The notes under the pieces: generated by a model
What the model was told of the DNA's origin: nothing
Database searches by the model: none
Seen by the model: only the letters and a program-made list of their open reading frames with translations
DNA from: Girardia tigrina
Lineage: Eukaryota
Direction of reading: 5' to 3'
DNA length: 56,313 nucleotides
NCBI GenBank assembly: GCA_001938485.1
Contig: MQRK01191162.1
Coordinates: forward strand, 1 to 56,313
Shown here: in pieces, positions 24,601 to 56,083 of the stretch
Layout of the letters: each line of letters starts with the position of its first letter
How positions within the stretch are numbered: position 1 is the stretch's first letter
Made by a program: the position numbers and the translations under genes

Positions 24601-27600
24601 TGTGAGAGGTGGTTGCAACATCAATATCCGAATTCATTTTTTAACACCAAACTTTATTTTTTTAGTTTTAAAATATTGAATAAGCATATTAACATTAAAA
24701 TATTTTACCTTTTAAAAAAATAATAAATTTTTCTGACGAGATAAAAATTTAAATTAACCCCTCATATCCCCTTTCGTTATGAATTTTCTCAATTTTTTTA
24801 TGTCTCGATCTAAAATTCTTCCATCTTCATTTATTAGTTTATACCTTCTGTCGTGTGATTTCTCTATCACTTTATACGGTCCTTCATATTTATCTTTACT
24901 CTTTATCCCCGTTTCCACCTTGACTAGTACTTCATCTCCAATTTCGAAATTTCTTCTGGTTGTTGTGTCTTCTTTTTCTTGCTGTACCTTTATGTCTTGA
25001 CTATGCCATCTTTCTCTGTATATTTTCTTACCGAATATAATTTCTACTGGGCTCTTCCCTATTGTTTTCTGAAAAGTTGCGTTAATTGTGAATTCTATTT
25101 CCGGTAGTAGTTCCTCCAAGTCTAATCTTTTCTTTGTACGTAACGATGCGTTTAAATATTCTCTAATCGTCCGAAATTGTCTTTCTACTATTCCATTCGT
25201 ATTATGATGGTACGGACTCGAGTAACACATTTTTATATTCATTGATTCTGCCATGTTTTTGATTACTTTTACTTCGAATGTCTTGCCAAAATCTGTATGA
25301 ATTTCCTTCGGTGCTCCAAATGTCAAGATTCATTTGGTCATTATCGTGTCTTTTATGGTTATTTCATCCTGCTTGCTAATGGCTGTCAAAGATATGTACC
25401 TACTAAACTGATCTATAATTGCAACAATATACTTTTTTCTTCTCTAAGTCTCTTTTAGTGGTCCGCATATGTCTATGTACACTTTCTCAAATGGTTCATT
25501 TGCGACCAGTGTCACCCGTTTTTCCTTTGTAGCGGTCGTTAATGTTTTACTTTTTTGGCATGCTTCACATTGTCCAATTACTTCCTTTATTATTTCATTC
25601 CGATTGATCATGTCATAATTTTCTGAGATGTATTTCGTTACTTTCACTGCGCCCGCGTGCGACAATAGTGTATGTATTTGTATGATCATTTCTTCTCTTT
25701 TTGACTTTGGTATCCAAATCTTCCCCATGTTTGTTCTTATTATGCCATCTTCGGTGGTACGCTTTCTGTCTTTACCTGAACTTGGGTCTCTTTTAATTTC
25801 TTCTATTTCTTCTTGTTGATATTTGAATATCTGCGATGTGTCCAGCACGTTGATTCTTCGAGTCTTTATCTTCATGAGCCATCAAGCATTGTGTACATGT
25901 ATCACATGTATTCCGAGACAACATATCCGCGTTGGAATTATCTGTTCCTTTTCTGTATTCTAAGTGTATGTCCAGGCTTGATAAATAATTTATCCATGTC
26001 TGAAATTGCGCCGTTATTGGTTTTTTTGTTTTAACCATAAACGTAATTACCTTATGATCCGTTCTCAAAGTGAATCGCTTTCCGTATAAATAATGATAAA
26101 AATGCTGACAGAAGTAATACATTGCCAACAGCTCTATCCTAGTAATGCAGTATTCTTTTTCATGATTATTCATGGAGTGTGAACGATATGCAAAACTCTC
26201 TCACGTCCGTCCTCGTCTCTTTGGTATAATACTGCTCCAATCGTGTCGAAACTGGCATCAGTGTCCAGTATAAATTCTTTCTAGAAGTCTGGGAATCCTA
26301 GAATCGGTGGTGTTGTTAAAGCCTCTTTCATCTCTGTAAATGCTTCATCACATGCGTCAGTCCATAACAATTTCTTCTTGTTCAATCCACACAGTTGTTC
26401 CAATGTCTTGGTTTTTGTTGCGTAGTCCTTAATAAATCGTCCGTAATAATTGCAAATTCCAAGGAAACTTCTTAGATTCTTTACACATTTCGGTTTTTCA
26501 AATGTCTTTATGGCTTCTAATTTAGATGGGTCCGTCTGTATATCTTTTTTCATTAATTACATGTCCCAAAAATTTAACTTCCGTTTTTAAGATGTGGCAC
26601 TTTTCCGGATTGATTCTTAAACCTGCTTTCCCGGTTTGATCCAATACTTTATCCAAAGTTTCGTAATATTGTTCCAACGATTTTGAAAATATAAGAATGT
26701 CATCTAAATATACCACTGTCTGTTCTATGTCTCCGAGCACCTTTGTCATGAGTTCCTGAAACGTTTCCGGTGCCACTGCTATACCAAACGGCATTCTATT
26801 GAAACAAAATTGACCTAGCTTTGTGGAAAATGCTGTTTTCAACTTTGAATCTTCCTCTAGTTCGACCTGGTAGTATGCATTACCTAAATCAATTGATGTG
26901 AAATATCTTGATCCATACAGTCTGTCCATCATTTATATCATATTTGGCATAGGAAATGCCTGTCTCTCCGTGACTAGATTTAGCTGTCTAAAATCCAAGC
27001 AAATTCTAACATCATTCTTCTCTTTCTTCCATACACAAATCATCGGTTTATTCCATGGTGAATTACTTTTCTTAATAATGTTGTTTTCCCACAAATTCTT
27101 AATAGTCTCATCGATCTTTTCTTCCAGATTAACTGGTTGCCTATGTGGTCTAAGGTTAATTGGAGGTCCTTTCGTGTCTATTCTATGTTTAATCATCGTC
27201 GTACATCCGATATTCCATTTATCCGCCATAAAAACTCCTTGATGTTTTTTAACAATATCTACAATCTTTGGTTTATCTGCAATTTTCATAATTTCCATGG
27301 CTCTTTTGAATCTTTCCTCGTTTGAAACCTTAAGTCCAAATTTGGCTTCTAAGTTACATACTTGATAAAATTGTTCGTTCACACCATTTTCTTTCTTTTT
27401 CCAATGTAACTCGATTCCAAACGTCATCTGCAAAGTTATTCCTCCTATAATGTCTGGTTTTATGTCATTTACTACAATGAACGTTATATTTCTCCGTTTT
27501 TCTTTAATTTCTACGTCCACTGAAATTTTACCCATACAATCTAGCTGACTACTGCCCACACAGTTTAATTTAATATCAGCCTTTTCTAATTTTACGTTCG

Positions 27601-29174
27601 TTAGTTTCTCAAAAATCTTTCTATGGATTACATTTACTCTTGCACCTATGTCTAATAAACAATCTTCTACGTTACCTTGTATCATCAACTTTATACTCGG
27701 TCGGCCTTGCATTCTATCATACGATATACTTTCTGCTTTCCATTCATCTATTGACAAAATGCTGATAATTTCTTCTGTGTTCTTTTCTTCAATTGTTCCC
27801 ACTAAACATCGTCCAAGCTTGTCCTCAAAAGTTTCATTCTTTATAAATTTCCGTACTTTATCATTTACTCTTGCTTCGCTTATCTCAACATTCCTTTCAT
27901 CGTTTTGGGAGTCGCTGGTATCCTTTAATTTATTGCCCCGACTGGCTCCACTTCTGTCGAGGTGTTGCCTTTTGAATGTTCACTTCCTGTAACCGATTCT
28001 TCATATTCCTCTTCAATGTTATTCACGAATCTTCGATTATCTCCTAGTCTTCTGTCTTCTCTCTCTCTATATCTTTGTTGATTGTAGCCCGATCATCGAT
28101 AGTTATTGTCCCCTGTATTTTGCTGTCTTCTTCTGCCATTAAGGTTTGTATAACATTCACTTTCACTGTGATATTTATCTTGAAATCTTTTGCATTCGAT
28201 GTTTGGACAGTTTCTTCTTACATGTCCCCGTTGTCCACAACTATAACATTTTATTGGTCTCCTTTCCGAACAATTTCTTATCATGTGTCCTTCTTTTCCA
28301 CATCCGAAACACTTGATTGGTTTTCTTTGTCTATACGTTTCACTTGTGTGACCTACTTTTTCACAATTTCTACATTTAACCACTTTCATGCCTTGAGCGT
28401 ATTCTGTAGTATTTCTACCAACCCCTGTCTGATTTTGTCCGTATTTACTCTCTCCTGTTACTGCTTCTCTGTAACTCCGGGGTCTGTTTTGCATCCCCTG
28501 GTCTCTTACTACATACACGTCTTCTGTCACACTTTTGACATCATGTACAGCCTTTATCTTTTCTTTTATCTCATCTATTCCTTTCACTTTGTTAAGTCTC
28601 ACTTCCTTTTTTATGTCCACATCATCACAACAATGTAACAATAATGCTTCCGTGAGGGCCTCTTTTGACAAGTCATGTTTCAAGATCTTGGCTGCGATTT
28701 TTTCTACTTTCTCAAAAAATACTTCCGGTATATCTTCCTTCATCCTGTACCGGCATGCCTCAGTCAGGTCTTTGAGGAAGTTCGAGAGAATGCCTTTCTC
28801 AATCGGTCTTATCTACCGCTTTGTATCGATCTTTCAGATCTCTCACCAACAAACAAACGACTATTGTCTCTTGTTTGGCCTTCGTTATTCCTGCAAAATT
28901 AAAGAATGTTTCCCATTCTTCAACAAATGTCTCCACATTATCGCATTTCCTGTACTTTTCAGGTAACAGTTGATCCGTGAAGATATTCATTGCAGCGTTA
29001 GTCACCATGTGAGAGGTGGTTGCAACGTCGATATCCGAATTCATTTTTAGAACACCAAACTTTATTTTTTTAATTTTAAAATATTGAATAAGCATATTAA
29101 CATTAAAATATTTTACCCTTTAAAAAAATAATAAATTATTCTGGCGAGATAAAAATTTAAATTAACCCCTCATA
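24601..29174 (-). mobile_element. Compact full-length Ty3/Gypsy LTR retrotransposon (gag-PR-RT-RH-IN), decayed
   Basis: LTRs 29008-29174 and 24601-24766 (~165 bp), PBS-like TGGTGAC, PPT GAAAGGGGA. Gag with CCHC knuckles, PR LLDIGA, RT YLDDILI, RH LDTDAS...ELLA...TDHK, IN H-H-C-C, IDICGP, HTDFG, NGIVER, GPY. Candidate TSD TATCT/TATTT. Confidence 0.95.
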
Positions 29175-31119
29175 TATTTAATAACAAACATAGAGATATG
29201 TATGTGTATAACCCATTTTATTTTCGAGTGTTCGATCGTGTACTTTGCTTGGGTTTGTTTGAAATGTGTAATAAGTGTAAATACGTGTTATTTTTTTTAT
29301 TATTTTTGAACAATTTTTTTCTGGTCAAAGAATAAAAAAGAGAAGATGAAGAGACAACAAATAGAAATAGACAAGCATCAAAAATTGTCATTTATTAGTC
29401 AATCGAATTATTTAAAAATTAAAAAGTCAAGAACTGAAAGACTAAAGAGTACGAAATTTGGTTTACTGAATTCGTGATAATTATCAAAATGTAATAAAAA
29501 TTAAAATTAGAAATTTTAAATTAAAAAATCAATAGAAAATTAATATTGCCATAAACGGCAGAATTTAACATTTCTGATTTCAATATATTCGTCTTGATAT
29601 ATTTGTCTTCTCAATAGAAAAAATTTATAACCAAGTTGCTGATTACTTTTGGGACACTGTTGATTAGTAAAATCAGAGAGGAATTTCCTGACAGAATTGT
29701 AATTTGACTGACGAAAGTCAAAACTATAATTTGCCAGACAATAATAGAAAATAATACATATAATAATTTGACAATAATCGATATAATTATATCTGATATC
29801 CATGAGACAATTTATCCAAGCAATACTGTTATATTTCGTGAGTAAATTTTTTATTCGAATTAAAGTTCATAGTTAAATCGAAATTTGTAATTTTTTTATT
29901 TTATCGTTGACTCCATCTCTATCAATAATCACACCTAAACAGGTGCGCCAAATAATATCTAGTTTGGTTAGCTTGGTTAGTTTTCCTCTCAATAGTAAAA
30001 AAATAACGGATTCACATCCTCCCAGATAGGAGAATGAGATTTGTTTTTTTATACAGTATGTAAAGAAAAATTATTAATCACACAGAATAAAAATTAGATT
30101 TGAAAAACACACCCTTAGTAATACCTAATTTTACTTTAAAGAATAGGTTCTTTTCCGATACCTTTAATCTTATGGATATGGTTACTCAAAAAGATAGAGA
30201 TAAATAAACAATAATATCAGTTTAATAGAAATTTATTTACAAATATTTATGAATGATTTTAAAAATACATAAATAATTATAATTTTACTGTTATGGAATA
30301 TAATTTCGGATGAAACTCAATTGTTGTAATTCTCGTTCTTCAACAATTCTCGGGTTCTCTCCTCGAAAATCACTTTGATCATTGATTTTTCTGTGCGCTG
30401 GAAATAATAATTTGCTCCAAAAAAACTTGTTTTTTTTTGTTTTTTTACAGTATTCAAATGCGAAATTGAAACTTTCCTCATAGCTAGTGTGGATTAAAAA
30501 GTCAGTTATCATTTTTATGCTTCTGATATTTATACTAAAATTTATGTATTTGGGCGTTAACCAACTCTTCTAATTTTATAGTTTTTTTTTTAAATTTAAA
30601 CTTCTTTTCGCTACCATGGGCGTGATCTTTAATTTTAATTTCTTTTAGATTTCTTTATTATATCTTATTTCTCTCATTTCTGTCTTATTTTCTTTTTTAT
30701 TATAAATTAGAATATAATCTTTAATTTATAGGTAATAATATAGCGCAATAAATAAATAATACCTTCGTATTATTTAGTGTTGTCAAAAAACTTATTTACA
30801 AAATTTATATAAGAAAATAATAATATAAACATTTCCCCAACAAATTTGTGTCATAAAGAAATTTTTAATTTGCTTGTTGGACTGAAAGAATTTAATTGAT
30901 TTTTAGGATAATACAAGGAATTTAATTGCAATATAAAAACATATACAAAACAAAAAATTTTAAATACTTTTAAGAAATACTTATTTTAAAAGGTTAATAA
31001 CGTCAGAATCAATTTTGTTGGATGTACCGTCATATTCTACAAATAATCCAGAGACACAAAAGACAGAAAAGTGTTAGTAATAGTGCGAACATAGAAAGAT
31101 CTGTTTAAGAATTAAAGTA

Positions 31120-32160: not shown

Positions 32161-32165
32161 CTTTT

Positions 32166-34179
32166 TGTGAAGAACCGAAAGTGTCTTCACTTTTTAAAAT
32201 AAAAAAAACGAGAATAATATTTCCAAAATATATTTCCAACGTCTAACAACTTAACATTTCATTTTGTCAATTTGTTAATCGATTTAATTATATTATAGGA
32301 ATTAAATCATTACACAAGCCCCCCTTTTGTAAGTGGAGCGTTACGTTATTTCAAACAATTTGAAAATTATGTTCGAATCTTGATTTGATTTTGTTACGGA
32401 ATTCGTTATTTAAATGTGTGAAATCAATTTCCTCAAATGGTTTTTTTGCACAAAATCTGATTCGTTTCTGATTTACAATNNNNNNNNNNNNNNNNNNNNN
32501 NNNNNNNNNNNNNNNNNNNNNNNNNNNNNNNNNNNNNNNNNNNNNNNNNNNNNNNNNNNNNNNNNNNNNNNNNNNNNNNNNNNNNNNNNNNNNNNNNNNN
32601 NNNNNNNNNNNNNNNNNNNNNNNNNNNNNNNNNNNNNNNNNNNNNNNNNNNNNNNNNNNNNNNNNNNNNNNNNNNNNNNNNNNNNNNNNNNNNTTTTTTA
32701 TAAATGGATGATATTCCTTTTGATAATCGTGTTTTATGCAACTGTCGATGTCTGTGGTGAAAACCGTCTCTTGATTTGAAATATGAAGATTTGTTTGGTT
32801 AAGAACAAGATTTTTTTTTCATTTCTTCGTGTTGCGAGTAATTGTCCTTGTGGGTTCTGGATGATAGGTTTTCAGTCGAAGTGGTCTGTACTGTCTTGTT
32901 CTGATATGTTTTGTTAAAAGTTTTAACGTCATTTTGAGAAATATGTAGAATTTCGTGTCTTGGAGTCATTGGACTCAACAAATGTGTTGTGGTAGGTGTT
33001 ACATTAGGAGGAGAAAGATTCTGGGATTTTGTAGTAGACANNNNNNNNNNNNNNNNNNNNNNCGTATTAGAACTATTATTACTAGAAGATTGCAAAGGAG
33101 ATTGAGGAGCTGCTGTTAATCCAGCTAATGTAACACATGGTGTTGCAGTGGTCGAATCAGTAGACTTCGGTCTAGTTTGTAGAGATGCACTTGTTGTGCA
33201 TAATTAGGGTTAGGAATTACGGCAGCAGGAATTTGATGAACGTACTGAGGTTGCGGTAAATACATCGTTGTGGTCGATTGAGGTAACATCATAGCTGCAT
33301 ATTGTGGAGGCATCACTGTTAAAGCTGAATAATGTTGCACAGGAACCTGACATAAAAATGATTCATTTTGCAAAGCATATGGAACTGGTCTATTATATGA
33401 AACTGTTCCAGAAATTTCTTGTCGAGGATATAAATGTTTCTTTCTTACAGCTTGTTTAATGTTTAATTTTCTCTCTTTAAAGATCAATGTTTCAGATTCA
33501 TTCTTGGTGAGATTTTCAGCAATTTCTTCATTTTCAAAAGTCACAAATCCATAGCTTCTTTTCGATAATCCNGTACGATCATTTATTATATTTGCGTATT
33601 TAATTGGACCATAATTCGAAAAGAAAATTTTTAATTCGTCCTCAGTTGTATTTGATGTGAGTCCATCCACAAAAATTCTGTTTGGTATAAGTGTACAAAT
33701 TTTAGGTATTGATACGTGAGAAAAAGAATTGAGCTGATTTCTTTGATTGATCTTGTTATGCTTCACTTTCTTTATAGTTTTAGAAATTCCCAATGCCAAT
33801 AAAGAGTATTCAACATTTTTTTGTACATCGAAAAGCAGTCTTTCCATAGCGTTTAATAGAAAATTGTATTTTATGTTCAACTGCGATAAATTATCTTGTT
33901 GATCTTGATATGTGGATAATGCTTCCTGGATTAACTGATTGAAATTTCTTTTTGAAGAACTTTTCTTTTTTAATGGAGGCATCTTCTTTTTTTCTTTTTT
34001 TTCTTCTGACACCAATTGTGAAGAACCGAAAGTGTCTTCACTTTAAAATAAAAAAACCGAGAATAATATTTCCAAAATATATTTCCAACGTCTAACAACT
34101 TAACATTTCATTTTGCCAATTTGTTAATCGATTTAATTATATTATAGGAATTAAATCGTATATAAATTAAATCATTACA
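32166..34179 (-). mobile_element. Non-autonomous short-LTR retrotransposon carrying a boule/DAZ-family gene
   Basis: LTRs 34017-34179 (5') and 32166-32314 (3'), TG...CA, near identical. PBS TGGTGTCAGAAG (34003-34014, tRNA-Leu(CAA) type); PPT AAAAGGGGGG (~32319-32328); perfect TSD CTTTT (32161-32165, 34180-34184). No RT/IN in the sequenced part. Confidence 0.93.
33125..33982 (-). CDS. boule: Boule/DAZ-family RRM RNA-binding protein, intronless, with an extra N-terminal helical region
   Basis: TLIPNRIFVDGL...TTEDELKIFFSNYGPIKYANIINDRxGLSKRSYGFVTFENEEIAENL...ETLIFKERKLNIKQAVRKK parallels the BOULE RRM (GTVIPNRIFVGG...DRAGVSKGYGFVTFE...KKLNIGPAIRK). Followed by a P/Q/Y-rich tail. ATG at 33982. 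Confidence 0.88.
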   Translation of the reverse strand: MPPLKKKSSSKRNFNQLIQEALSTYQDQQDNLSQLNIKYNFLLNAMERLLFDVQKNVEYSLLALGISKTIKKVKHNKINQRNQLNSFSHVSIPKICTLIPNRIFVDGLTSNTTEDELKIFFSNYGPIKYANIINDRXGLSKRSYGFVTFENEEIAENLTKNESETLIFKERKLNIKQAVRKKHLYPRQEISGTVSYNRPVPYALQNESFLCQVPVQHYSALTVMPPQYAAMMLPQSTTTMYLPQPQYVHQIPAAVIPNPNYAQQVHLYKLDRSLLIRPLQHHVLH

Positions 34180-34669
34180 CTTTTGATTAATATTGACAAC
34201 TGTTCCACATTTTGTAATAAATACACGGGAAAATATTTGTGACATGAAAATTTGGTCTTAAATTATTGTTCGATTTTTAAACTTTCTGAAATCGCCAATC
34301 TAAACTCAAAAAATCGCAGAAATTAGCATCTGCAAAATTACATTCAAAATCCATAAAAAATGAAAACATATCGACAGTATCAAATTCAATTCAAAATCAA
34401 AAAATCGGAGTCAAAACACAAAAGAATTTCATTTAAACATTAAAAGTCCGTACTCACGCAAAACATAATGATGTGTTTAAATAACACCAAAGGTAAAAAG
34501 ATATTTTTACAAAATACAGATTTTTCTTTTTTACAAAACAATATTCACAAAAAAACAAATTTTTCATCTACACAAAAATTCATAGAATATAAACATATTT
34601 GTATTTGATTTTAAAAATTTTATTCTTAAAAAATTTCAAATTTTGATCCGAACATACCACTCCCGTCTC

Positions 34670-48260: not shown

Positions 48261-49742
48261 TCAAATATTTAAATCCATTCTGATACAGTCGGGTTTTGAG
48301 TTCTTCTTCTGCAAATTAACGAAACCAAAGAATTGATCGGTGGCAGAGGAATTACAATTGGTCGAGGTAATGTCGTTGTTGTCGTCGTCGTCGTCGTGAT
48401 CCTCATCGTCGATAATCCTCGACCGAGTAACACACGTTTTATGCGGACAATAATAGTACAAGTGAGACGCCATCGAGTCGCCATGCATCGACTGATAACC
48501 GCACGAGCAAATCAATACGCCCCGCTGATAAATATCGATCGATTTGCAGTTACTATTGTTGCTGCCGCTGCTGCTGGTGTGATTGTGATTGTTATTGTTG
48601 GCGTTGCAAGCGGCGTTATTCGAGTTATTGGCGACACCGATCGCGACTGATTGATTGACATTGGAATCCGATTGAAAGTTATGAATCAATCGATTGTGCC
48701 GGCGGAACGCCGCGACGCAATACGACCGGAATCCGCAATGCGAGCACAAATTGAACGATTGGAAATGCGTGGCGAGATTCGTCGACAAATACTCGCGACA
48801 CTCGACGCAATTCATCGGCAGCCGGTACGACCCGATCGTCAATCGAGCGATATCGATCGGTTGATTGGTCGATGCGTTGAGCGATTTTTTGATGATTTTC
48901 TGCGGCTGGTTCGCGGACGACGCGACAGAACCGACCGACGAGAGATCGGACGCGACCGGCAGCGGTTTGCCGTCGTGGTAGACGGTCTTGTGGAAGATGA
49001 GCGCGAGTTTGGTGGTGAATTTGAGCACGCATTTGTCGCACGCGAACTGTTTCTTGGACAGATGCTTCTCGATATGTGTGAGGAACGCCGTGGCGTCGAG
49101 ACAGCACGACGACGACGACGACGAGGACGACTGAGACAGCTCGAACGATTGGATACAGAACGGACAAATGAGATATTCGGTCGATTTGTGGTTGTCGTGG
49201 AAATGCTGCTTCAATTGCGACAGAATCGACGTGCGATAGAAATTGCACACGAAGCACACGTACGGCATGTCCTGGTAGACGTGCTTGGACTCCAGGTGCT
49301 GGCCGAGACCGATTATCGATCGGAAATCCAGGCAACAGATCTCGCAGCGATAACAATTGCGTTGATTATCGATTGCTGTCGATTGGTTGGTGTCGTTGAA
49401 AATCGTGTTTGAGAGCGCTTGGAGCTTCGGGGACAAGAGCGAGTCGAGTGTGGAATAATCGGATTTGTAGTGGTCGATGATGTGATTGACGAAATGGCAA
49501 TTGAGGAACGATTGGTGACATTTGGGACAATCGATTGAATATTGTGGTTTGACGAATTTCCGGTTGATTGGATGTTGGATCGAGAGATACTTCTGGGAAA
49601 GATCTTCGACTCCGTAGAAGAAATGGAAAATATCGTTGTTTGTATCGGTGTTTGAGTCGTGATTGAAATCGTGATCGGTGGAGTTTTTTTTCACGAAAAT
49701 TATTTCCTCTTCTTCCGAGAGTGTCAGATCGATGCAATTCAT
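48261..49742 (-). CDS. Multi-C2H2 zinc-finger protein, ZNF280/POGZ-like, 493 aa, intronless
   Basis: CEICCLDF...QHLESKHVYQDMPYVCFVCNFYRTS...HFHDNHKSTEYLICPFC...CDKCVLKF...HKTVYH...CVEC...THF...CSHCGFRSYC follows the ZNF280/POGZ finger order (HM..H..GEMPYVCQVC.YRSS...HF...H..T..LLCPFC). Open ATG to TAA. Confidence 0.85.
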   Translation of the reverse strand: MNCIDLTLSEEEEIIFVKKNSTDHDFNHDSNTDTNNDIFHFFYGVEDLSQKYLSIQHPINRKFVKPQYSIDCPKCHQSFLNCHFVNHIIDHYKSDYSTLDSLLSPKLQALSNTIFNDTNQSTAIDNQRNCYRCEICCLDFRSIIGLGQHLESKHVYQDMPYVCFVCNFYRTSILSQLKQHFHDNHKSTEYLICPFCIQSFELSQSSSSSSSSCCLDATAFLTHIEKHLSKKQFACDKCVLKFTTKLALIFHKTVYHDGKPLPVASDLSSVGSVASSANQPQKIIKKSLNASTNQPIDIARLTIGSYRLPMNCVECREYLSTNLATHFQSFNLCSHCGFRSYCVAAFRRHNRLIHNFQSDSNVNQSVAIGVANNSNNAACNANNNNHNHTSSSGSNNSNCKSIDIYQRGVLICSCGYQSMHGDSMASHLYYYCPHKTCVTRSRIIDDEDHDDDDDNNDITSTNCNSSATDQFFGFVNLQKKNSKPDCIRMDLNI

Positions 49743-51306: not shown

Positions 51307-52291
51307 CTAGTATTTAGTTTGCGAACCTTTGGCGAGAAGAACGGATTTCAATCGTCTTGGAATGGAATCATACATATGTTCTGAGGTTGAAATATTCTCC
51401 CATTCTTCCTGTATATAAGTCCATAAATCATTAGCTGATTGTTGATTACGCCTGCCAACATTTCTTTTAATGGTAGACCAGATATTCTCTATAATATTCA
51501 AATCCGGCGACTGTGGGGGTCAACCTGACATAACATATACTTTTTCTTTTTCAAAGTATTTTAATGTAGACTTCGACGTATGACATGTCGCACAATCTTG
51601 AATAAATACAGATGTAGTATCGTAAATCTTTAACAAGCCTTCTTTAAAAACAGCTTGATATCCCAAAGATTCCATTCTTTTAGTGAACTTTACAATGACT
51701 TTAGTACCATCACCTTTATTGGTACCCAATACCATTATGGATAATGGATGTTTAACCGTCTTGCAAACGTAGCAGTTACAAAACCTTGAATCTTTGGGTC
51801 GTCGGACATATTGCCGACGTGAACTTAACATTTCAATAATTGTCTCATCTGAATAAATCATCTTCTTCCATGTACTAATGTCTAATGCTGAATATGCCTT
51901 GGCCCAAGCAACTCTCTTTTTCATATTAATTTTGTTAATAAATGGTTTTTTGCTGCAATACGTCCGCAAAGACCTCCTCTACTTAAATATCTTTTAACTG
52001 TAGCCTTGGATAACTCTGTTGGGCCATTTGTGAGTCTATACACCTCGGCGGCTGAAAGAAACTGGTTTCTTTTGGAGGTACGACAAAGATTTCTTCTTTC
52101 TGGCAAGGTTGCTTTTATAGGTCTACCAGTCCTTTTACCGTCAGTAGTGCTTCCAAATTTTAGGTACTTTTTCCAATATAATCTGATGTTGATTGTCCTA
52201 GCATCAGATCTTCAGCAAACTCGATCTGCTCATAACCGGCTTTCATTTTTTTCACAATCAAATCTGTTATTTAGTCACTGATCCTAGGCAT
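51307..52291 (-). mobile_element. Tc1-family transposase pseudogene (near full length)
   Basis: RTGRP, AAKKPFI, IYSDET, FIQDCATCHTSK, PPQSPDLNIIENIW, SIPRRLKSVLLAKGSQTKY; stops and frameshifts. Confidence 0.93.
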
Positions 52292-54867: not shown

Positions 54868-55186
54868 CGAAAAATTCCTTGGTCGCGCATTTAATAAATC
54901 AATAAGTTTAAAACCTGATAATAAAATCAAAATCGAATTAATCTAATAAAGAGAGAATATTAATACTTATAACCAACTTGGGCTAGGTCCTTTGAGAATT
55001 AACCTTTGTTAACTTTCAGAGTACAAATTGAGATAAGTTTTTATTTAGATCGGATTCCGAAAGCAACAGAAGAATATTTTGTTAATTATTACTGAGTTTT
55101 AAATTTTTGAATCAATTTTCGTTGCTTTTTTTTAAGTTTCTTTTGATTTGAACCTTGTTAAACAACCACATACACATATACACATA

Positions 55187-56083
55187 ATGGATCACAAGAA
55201 AAGACAAAAGAACCAAGAAATCGTAGAGAATGGTTCTATGGTAGGAACCCCTACATTAAACAGAAAAATAAATAAAAGCTTCGACTACATTCCGATAGAC
55301 CCCTATGACGGAAAACCCGAACACTTCGATAAATATTTCGAAAATTACAAGAATCTTGCCAGCGCGTGCAATTGGACGGAAGCTGAGATGATCCAAAGGA
55401 TGCCTTTGTACCTAAAGGGTTATACGCTTCAAGCGTTTCTCAATATAAAAAGAGATAACATAAAGTCAATCAACGAATTGATTAAAATACTCAGAGGAAT
55501 CATAGTTGTCGATACCGAGCTAGCGAAATTGTACACACGAGCCTTTATGAATCTCACACAGCAACAAAAAGAAAATATAGTTGAATATATTTTCGCAGTG
55601 AGGGAATTAGTAGATAAGGCATCTGGAGAAAATACTCAGGTCAATAACATAATATTGGACCAATTTCAAAGCGGAGTACATGATTACATAAAGAGTGCAT
55701 TAGCATTAGTCGATTTCACTGATTTAAATGATTTGGTACAAAAAGCTAGGCGTATTGAAGCCAGCTATGTGAGTAGGGAAAAGCATAACCTAGAGTTATG
55801 TGCTTTTAACCCCTCACAAAATAAAAGAAATAATGGTGATAGAAATTCACCAAAAAATGCACTGAATCAACGAGGATTCAATACACGAGGTGGAACTGTT
55901 CGAAGAAACAGACCCACAAGTAATTACAGAAATAACTATCAGAATGATAGTTACGATCAGAACAATGATAATAATAGAAATAGCGGATATAGAGGTAATA
56001 ATTACAGAAGAAACGGTAGAAACAACTATAATAGAAATTATCAGGAAAAATACAACAATAGAAATTGTGAAGGACTCATGTGA
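55187..56083 (+). CDS. Ty3/Gypsy Gag (capsid plus N/R/Y-rich region), probably cut by an insertion at ~56066
   Basis: PYDGKPEHFDKYFENY...NWTE...LYLKG...LTQQQKENIVEY...QFQSGV...ARRIE. Abrupt switch to AT-rich sequence starting TGTGAAGG. Confidence 0.85.
   Translation: MDHKKRQKNQEIVENGSMVGTPTLNRKINKSFDYIPIDPYDGKPEHFDKYFENYKNLASACNWTEAEMIQRMPLYLKGYTLQAFLNIKRDNIKSINELIKILRGIIVVDTELAKLYTRAFMNLTQQQKENIVEYIFAVRELVDKASGENTQVNNIILDQFQSGVHDYIKSALALVDFTDLNDLVQKARRIEASYVSREKHNLELCAFNPSQNKRNNGDRNSPKNALNQRGFNTRGGTVRRNRPTSNYRNNYQNDSYDQNNDNNRNSGYRGNNYRRNGRNNYNRNYQEKYNNRNCEGLM

What the first reader, a model, noticed from the sequence alone, without database searches (positions are those of the whole stretch)
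32166..34179. LTR retroelement whose cargo is a captured germline regulator (boule/DAZ) instead of gag-pol
Seen: two near-identical ~150-160-bp LTRs, a tRNA-Leu PBS, a PPT and a perfect 5-bp TSD (CTTTT), which indicates the unit integrated as a whole. Between the LTRs, in sense and starting ~20 nt after the PBS, is an intronless 285-codon open frame containing a Boule-type RRM. Known: Boule/DAZ/DAZL proteins bind U-rich 3' UTR motifs and promote translation in germ cells and at meiotic entry; LTR elements can transduce host mRNAs. Inference: this is a mobile, trans-mobilised boule retrogene driven by the LTR promoter. It could boost translation of element RNA in germ cells, skew germ-cell fate or transmission, or act as a dominant variant of host Boule. 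I know of no described boule-carrying LTR family, but cannot check.
Basis: partly seen in the sequence, partly recalled or inferred. Interest (0 to 1): 0.93.

Follow-up and report, generated by a model that had tools for sequence, protein, structure and literature searches.

The report
Retroelement carrying a captured boule gene
A 2-kb LTR retroelement in a flatworm genome has most of its own gene replaced by an intron-free copy of the germ-cell regulator boule, fused in frame to the start of the element's own protein; this kind of capture is known, the cargo is new, and this copy is already damaged.

Summary
At 32166-34179, on the minus strand, lies a complete small LTR element. It has LTRs of 163 and 149 nt, TG..CA ends, a 5-bp CTTTT duplication, a 12-nt primer site matching tRNA-Leu(CAA), and a purine tract. 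Between these is a 285-codon open frame with a Boule-type RRM. The two long N stretches lie outside that frame.

Three things are new. The first 89 codons are not boule: they are the start of the element family's own protein, as seen in parent-type contigs, so the gene is an element-Boule fusion. Two further contigs carry the identical junction, which points to one capture followed by copying. All three copies have lost frame at least once. The RRM nevertheless shows few amino-acid changes between copies.

The nearest named relative of the cargo is Schmidtea mediterranea Boule1 (79% identity). A flatworm boule gene has an intron inside the RRM; the cargo has none.

This matches LTR-mediated retroposition by template switching (Tan et al. 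2016). It is a new member of a known kind. No autonomous partner, expression evidence or function was shown. The germ-line "driver" ideas remain speculation.

The parts
32161..32165 (.). Target-site duplication, left copy (CTTTT on the + strand)
32166..32314 (-). 3' LTR, 149 nt, TG..CA ends
   Evidence: 145 of 147 aligned nt identical to the 5' LTR, with two indels
32319..32328 (-). Polypurine tract AAAAGGGGGG, 4 nt before the 3' LTR
   Evidence: This tract and about 17 nt before it are shared with the parent-type contig L002.
32329..32798 (-). Stretch between the end of the boule-like reading and the PPT. It holds the 214-N run 32480-32693. Its origin is unknown (boule 3' UTR or other), and the 3' junction with element sequence lies somewhere inside it.
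   Evidence: Clear similarity to L002 is limited to roughly the last 30-45 nt next to the PPT.
32799..33982 (-). Fusion gene, given as one part: 89 element-derived codons followed by boule-derived coding sequence. It is broken by at least one frameshift, with no stop inside the matched stretches. It is open for 285 codons from its ATG. It holds the 22-N run 33041-33062 and a single n at 33573.
33716..33982 (-). Element-derived N-terminal module, 89 codons. It is shared at about 94% with the ORF of the parent-type elements L002 and L003 (protein P0009), which then continue differently.
33491..33676 (-). RRM (Pfam RRM_1, residues 103-164 of the frame), Boule type
34003..34014 (-). Primer-binding site TGGTGTCAGAAG, complementary to the 3' end of tRNA-Leu(CAA)
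   Evidence: PMC7997516; PMC8905726
34017..34179 (-). 5' LTR, 163 nt
34180..34184 (.). Target-site duplication, right copy (CTTTT)

Best explanation
This is a chimeric, non-autonomous LTR retroelement made by LTR-mediated retroposition.

Origin (inferred). While the RNA of a small tRNA-Leu-primed LTR element was being reverse-transcribed, the enzyme of an unidentified autonomous relative switched from the element RNA to a co-packaged, spliced boule1-like mRNA. The switch left the element 89 codons into its own ORF. The enzyme switched back close to the polypurine tract. The product is LTR - PBS - 89 element codons - boule cDNA (from just before the RRM onward) - PPT - LTR.

Spread (partly shown). 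The chimera kept every cis signal needed for copying, so it could be copied again. At least three copies carry the identical junction.

This copy (shown). It inserted as a unit and made a 5-bp duplication. Since then it has gained 2 substitutions and 2 indels between its LTRs, at least one frameshift in the fusion gene, and a change in the RNP2 motif. It is most likely a decaying copy.

Family level (weak evidence). The RRM appears to have been kept under purifying selection for some time. This suggests the fusion protein once bound RNA usefully for something.

Shown: the anatomy, the fusion, the shared junction, the absence of introns, and the breaks. Inferred: template switching, trans-copying, and any function.
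For: - Anatomy of LTR/TSD/PBS/PPT; PBS identity.
- Fusion: P0009 (444 aa, contig L002) matches only the N-terminal module at 94% and then continues into a different protein with a CWYH..C..PC knuckle. L002 starts at the same PBS and ends with a homologous PPT and LTR start, so it is the internal region of a related element.
- More distant relatives (P0123, P0125) also combine an N-terminal region with the knuckle, so the module is native to the element protein.
- Same junction in the window, L001 and L005. L001 also carries the LTR end and the PBS.
- Boule identity.
- Processed origin: the Hymenolepis boule gene has 3 introns, one of them inside the RRM. S. mediterranea gene models carry short extra inserts at three places in or just after the RRM, one of them at that same place. 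The cargo is uninterrupted.
- RRM constraint: dN/dS is 0.08-0.14 in the two comparisons involving L001, against about 0.6-1.9 after the RRM. For window versus L001, 7 of 11 differences are synonymous, binomial p = 0.002.
- The mechanism and its hallmarks are described in PMC5131818.
Against: - No host boule mRNA or gene from this genome was available, so microsimilarity at the switch points, the hallmark of template switching, is untested.
- The 3' junction is not placed and may lie in or near the 214-N run.
- No autonomous partner was found. The Ty3/gypsy-type element 3 kb away shares neither the LTR nor the protein.
- L001 and L005 come from metagenome samples of unknown organism. They could be orthologous or allelic copies rather than new insertions, and neither shows a target site.
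- L005 has unrelated sequence where the LTR and PBS should be.
- The dN/dS values rest on 3-16 differences per class.
- Pfam does not recognise the parent ORF as Gag.
Confidence: 0.72

Rival explanations
1. A working 'selfish' gene. The element-Boule fusion protein is expressed from the LTR in germ cells and helps the element or alters germ-cell fate. Intact copies would exist elsewhere in the genome, and the family would be maintained by selection on the protein.
For: Low dN/dS in the RRM between copies. The fusion is in frame, and the junction is kept in three copies. The RRM and the conserved stretch after it lie inside the open frame.
Against: All three copies seen are frame-broken. This copy has a G-to-D change in RNP2, at a position that is G in all seven other sequences aligned. 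The part after the RRM evolves neutrally. There are no expression data. The constraint signal rests on few sites and could date from early in the family's history.
Confidence: 0.15
2. Capture by read-through and splicing, as with retroviral oncogenes. An element inserted upstream of or inside boule, a read-through transcript joined element and boule sequence, and a single later template switch restored the 3' end.
For: In-frame fusions of an N-terminal element protein with a host gene are the classic result of that route (established knowledge of acutely transforming retroviruses). A second host gene model (P0124, CUT domain) is fused to the same module about four residues earlier. That could point to a preferred break or donor site.
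Against: In the cestode boule gene the residues at the junction lie inside exon 1, not at an exon border. The parent-type sequence shows no GT at the junction. The host gene of this species has not been seen.
Confidence: 0.12
3. Assembly or scaffolding chimera. The LTRs and the boule sequence do not belong together.
For: Two N runs lie inside the element, and the 3' LTR is tied to the cargo only across them.
Against: 5' LTR, PBS and the whole open frame form one uninterrupted stretch (33063-34179). The independent contig L001 shows the same LTR end, PBS and fusion. The TSD matches on both sides. The flanks of the 22-N run are collinear with L001.
Confidence: 0.03
4. An ordinary host boule paralogue that happens to lie between two solo LTRs or two separate insertions.
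For: None beyond the presence of many retroelements in the window.
Against: PBS and PPT abut the LTRs on the inner sides. A single TSD flanks the whole unit. The N-terminal module, PBS and PPT are shared with parent-type elements.
Confidence: 0.03

Closest known systems
LTR-mediated retrocopies of metazoans (Tan et al. 2016, PMC5131818)
   Same: An intron-free, partial copy of a host mRNA replaces part of the element's ORF and is flanked by the two ends of one LTR element. Such chimeras can behave as non-autonomous elements and be copied again with the same switch points.
   Different: This one is in a flatworm, its cargo is boule, and the fusion with the element's ORF is in frame. Microsimilarity at the fusion points could not be tested.
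Maize Bs1 (Elrouby and Bureau, as summarised in PMC5131818)
   Same: An LTR element carrying host gene sequence. It has a few copies, all with the same switch points.
   Different: Bs1 is in a plant and combines pieces of three genes. No relation in sequence.
Gag-Onc fusions of acutely transforming retroviruses (established knowledge)
   Same: The N-terminal part of the element's own protein is fused in frame to a processed host regulator. The element has lost its enzymes and depends on a helper.
   Different: There is no sign of an infectious virus, no env, and no evidence of any effect on the host. This is a likeness in design only.
Steamer and Steamer-like LTR elements of bivalves (PMC8905726)
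   Same: An identical 12-nt tRNA-Leu primer site, and LTRs starting TGTAA.
   Different: Those elements are autonomous gag-pol elements. No protein or LTR similarity to them was shown or tested here. Using the same primer does not show kinship.
Boule1 of Schmidtea mediterranea (UniProt A0A172RVQ0, P0130)
   Same: 79% identity over the RRM region. It is the closest named protein.
   Different: The host protein has its own N-terminus. The host gene appears to have introns, judging from inserts in gene models. The cargo carries shared derived changes in all three copies.
TRIM/LARD-type non-autonomous LTR elements (established knowledge)
   Same: Short LTRs, PBS and PPT, no reverse transcriptase, dependence on a partner.
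   Different: Those classes typically lack a meaningful ORF. This element and its parent type each carry one long ORF.

Membership tests
LTR retrotransposon (structural definition) | Two direct long terminal repeats with TG..CA ends | tested here: met
LTR retrotransposon (structural definition) | Target-site duplication of 4-6 bp | tested here: met
   CTTTT on both sides
LTR retrotransposon (structural definition) | tRNA primer-binding site next to the 5' LTR and polypurine tract next to the 3' LTR | tested here: met
LTR retrotransposon (structural definition) | gag and pol genes (autonomy) | tested here: not met
   Pfam finds only an RRM in the open frame. The element is therefore non-autonomous.
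LTR-mediated retrocopy (Tan et al. 2016) | Internal host-derived sequence that replaces part of the element ORF, with element sequence on both sides | tested here: met
LTR-mediated retrocopy (Tan et al. 2016) | No introns where the parental gene has them | tested here: met
   A cestode boule gene has an intron inside the RRM. Planarian gene models have an insert at the same point. The parental gene of this genome itself was not seen.
LTR-mediated retrocopy (Tan et al. 2016) | Microsimilarity between element and mRNA at the switch points | not testable with these tools
   No host boule mRNA or DNA could be obtained.
LTR-mediated retrocopy (Tan et al. 2016) | Secondary copies sharing the same switch points | tested here: inconclusive
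   Three copies have the same 5' junction. Their genomic sites and species are unknown.
Boule/DAZ family | Single RRM whose closest relatives are Boule/DAZL | tested here: met
Boule/DAZ family | DAZ motif after the RRM | tested here: inconclusive
   A stretch after the RRM aligns with the other flatworm Boule proteins. No Pfam DAZ model matched.
Steamer-like (Mag lineage of Ty3/gypsy) | Kinship of gag-pol proteins | not tested
   Only the PBS is the same. The parent ORF has no Pfam or PDB match. The element is not filed under this family.

The most novel reading that the evidence does not exclude
The element belongs to a planarian lineage of small LTR elements whose N-terminal module is fused again and again to host regulators: Boule here, and a CUT-domain transcription factor in model P0124. 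On this reading the element-Boule protein is, or recently was, a working RNA-binding protein carried and spread by a mobile element in an animal whose germ line is remade from stem cells.
Probability: 0.12. Interest if true: 0.8.

Novelty: new member of a known kind. Interest (0 to 1): 0.5.

Why it matters
Clear cases of LTR elements capturing host genes are few in animals. This one has every landmark still readable: LTRs, TSD, PBS, PPT, an exact 5' junction, and parent-type relatives. It shows an in-frame element-host fusion that was copied after capture. The cargo is a conserved germ-cell translation regulator. If any copy is expressed, that is worth a look in planarian germ-line biology. 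As it stands, this is a tidy example of a known way of making new chimeric genes, not a new system.

Tried and rejected
- Scan of metagenome contigs with the protein: none of the pattern matches was confirmed as a relative.
- Scan of metagenome contigs with a 19-nt junction pattern: two matches, both bare chance matches with no further similarity.
- Look-ups of host boule DNA for P0130, P0069 and P0002, and of the contig for P0124: not on record.
- Exact look-up of five window ORFs to name the species: none is in the collection.
- Search for relatives of the parent ORF: few hits, no Pfam or PDB match. Calling it 'Gag' is therefore an inference from its position and a Cys/His knuckle.
- Possible integrase-tail (GPY) likeness of its C-end: one 9-residue match to the neighbouring gypsy-type element, E = 0.023. 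This is too weak to use.
- The neighbouring Ty3/gypsy-type element as partner: rejected, because it shares neither the LTR nor the protein.
- JGI sample numbers in the literature: nothing found.
- tRNA and Rfam scans of the window: empty.

Full report
**1. What is there**

The unit at 32166-34179 reads 5' to 3' on the minus strand.
- The two repeats are 163 nt (34017-34179, the 5' LTR) and 149 nt (32166-32314, the 3' LTR).
- They differ by 2 mismatches in 147 aligned nt and by 2 indels, of 16 and 2 nt. Both start TGTAATG and end TTCACA.
- The repeat occurs nowhere else in the 56-kb window.
- CTTTT flanks the unit on both sides, at 32161-32165 and 34180-34184. The chance of such a recurrence at this base composition is about 0.0016.
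- Two nt after the 5' LTR comes TGGTGTCAGAAG (34003-34014), the only such site in the window. A published oligo probe for tRNA-Leu(CAA) begins with these same 12 letters (PMC7997516). It is also the 12-bp primer site reported for the clam element Steamer, described there as complementary to a Leu tRNA (PMC8905726).
- Four nt before the 3' LTR lies AAAAGGGGGG (32319-32328).
- Twenty nt after the primer site an ATG (33982) opens a 285-codon frame. It has a Pfam RRM_1 match at residues 103-164, E = 1.5e-15.

**2. The N stretches (tested first, as asked)**

- Both long runs lie 3' of the open frame.
- One single n (33573) gives an X inside the RRM. Relatives align on both sides of it without a shift.
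- The flanks of the 22-N run are collinear with another copy, L001, in which they are also 22 nt apart. I counted only the spacing. I took, used and report no letters. L001 was printed whole before I knew that it covers this stretch.
- No sequence I hold spans the 214-N run.
- The 5' LTR, the primer site and the whole open frame form one uninterrupted stretch. The tie between the 3' LTR and the cargo rests on the scaffold and on the matching duplication.

**3. The cargo is Boule**

- Among 5.8 billion proteins the best hits are almost all named Boule, and flatworm proteins come first.
- With a shorter query the best named hit is Boule1 of Schmidtea mediterranea, at 79% identity.
- Among solved structures the best single-domain match is the DAZL RRM: 51.7 bits over residues 97-185. 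Single domains of hnRNP A2/B1 and Hrp1 score 34.1 and 32.3 bits.
- The window is thus from a flatworm, most likely a planarian. I could not name the species.

**4. The frame is a fusion**

- Protein P0009 (444 aa, contig L002) matches only the first part of the frame, at 94%. It then continues into a different protein with a CWYH..C..PC knuckle.
- L002 begins with the same primer site and ends with a homologous purine tract and LTR start. It is therefore the inside of a related small LTR element. L003 is a second such contig.
- More distant relatives (P0123, P0125) also join an N-terminal region to that knuckle. The module therefore belongs to the element's own protein.
- DNA alignment places the junction after codon 89 (33716|33715).
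- I call the parent protein Gag-like only from its position and its knuckle. Pfam and the PDB do not recognise it.

**5. A family with one junction**

- Contigs L001 and L005 carry the same junction letter for letter.
- L001 also has the LTR end and the primer site.
- L005 is 97.5% identical to the window in the boule part. It has unrelated, G+C-richer sequence where the LTR and primer site should be. This is unexplained.
- A scan of metagenome contigs with the protein confirmed no relative. A scan with the junction gave only two chance matches.

**6. Processed origin**

- A cestode boule gene (L004) has three introns, one of them inside the RRM.
- Gene models of planarian boule1 (P0069, P0008) carry short extra inserts at three places in or just after the RRM. 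One is at that same place.
- The cargo has no interruption.

**7. State of the genes (counts only)**

- In each of the three copies the homology to the parent and to Boule proteins is spread over two frames. That means at least one frameshift per copy. There are no stops inside the matched stretches.
- The window copy also has D at an RNP2 position that is G in all seven other sequences aligned.
- Between copies the RRM shows dN/dS of 0.08-0.14 in the two comparisons involving L001. In the window-L005 pair only three differences separate the RRMs. The part after the RRM gives 0.6-1.9.
- In window versus L001, 7 of 11 RRM differences are synonymous, binomial p = 0.002. The counts are small.
- L005 is close to the window in the boule part but not in the N-terminal module. 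This suggests exchange between family members.

**8. Mechanism**

The anatomy fits LTR-mediated retroposition. Reverse transcriptase switches from element RNA to a co-packaged mRNA and back. The result is a partial, intron-free gene copy inside a discontinuous LTR element, and the chimera can be copied again as a non-autonomous element (PMC5131818).
- The 5' switch lies after codon 89.
- The 3' switch lies somewhere between the end of the boule-like reading and about 30-45 nt before the purine tract. The 214-N run falls in that stretch.
- Microsimilarity at the switch points could not be tested, because no host boule DNA was obtainable.
- A read-through-and-splice route is less likely. In the cestode gene the junction residues lie inside exon 1.

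**9. What was not found**

- No autonomous partner was found. The Ty3/gypsy-type element at about 24.6-29.2 kb is unrelated.
- There is no evidence of expression and none of function.
- I found no paper on a boule-carrying LTR element.

**10. Verdict**

This is a real, well-preserved, non-autonomous LTR element carrying an element-Boule fusion. It is a new member of a known kind, and this copy is decaying.

Noticed in passing
window 24601-29175, minus strand: A separate Ty3/gypsy-type LTR element. Its LTR pair lies at about 24601-24767 and 29008-29175. It has a zf-CCHC gag ORF, an RVT_1 ORF and an Integrase_H2C2 ORF. The coding region is split over several ORFs, so it is broken. It shares neither the LTR nor the protein with the finding.
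   Followed up: partly
protein P0124 (UniParc UPI000608E5E5; no contig on record): A 704-aa CUT-domain model starts with the same element N-terminal module (81% identity over 43 residues). It leaves the module about four residues before the boule junction. It is either a second host gene fused to this module or a gene-model artefact.
   Followed up: partly
L005:1-205: This copy of the fusion has unrelated sequence, 38-51% G+C, where the LTR and primer site should be. The sequence has no match in the window. It could be a 5'-truncated copy, a chimeric transcript or an assembly join.
   Followed up: partly
window 34017-34179 versus 32166-32314: The 5' LTR carries 16 extra nt near its start. These look like a local duplication of neighbouring letters.
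   Followed up: no
window 51523-51969, minus strand: An ORF with weak DDE_3 and Tc3-type transposase matches: a fragment of a Tc1/mariner-like DNA transposon.
   Followed up: no
window 48264-49742, minus strand: A 493-aa ORF with a POGZ-like double zinc finger, the longest ORF in the window. It is either a host exon or transposon-derived.
   Followed up: no
window 55148-56080, plus strand: A 311-aa ORF with a weak Retrotrans_gag match (20.3 bits, below the curated cut-off of 24.1). It is probably part of a further retroelement that runs off the window.
   Followed up: no
L002 and L003 (JGI contigs): The parent-type element is itself non-autonomous. Between its primer site and purine tract lies one 444-aa ORF with no reverse transcriptase. 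The ORF has a low-complexity middle and a weak GPY-like C-end.
   Followed up: partly
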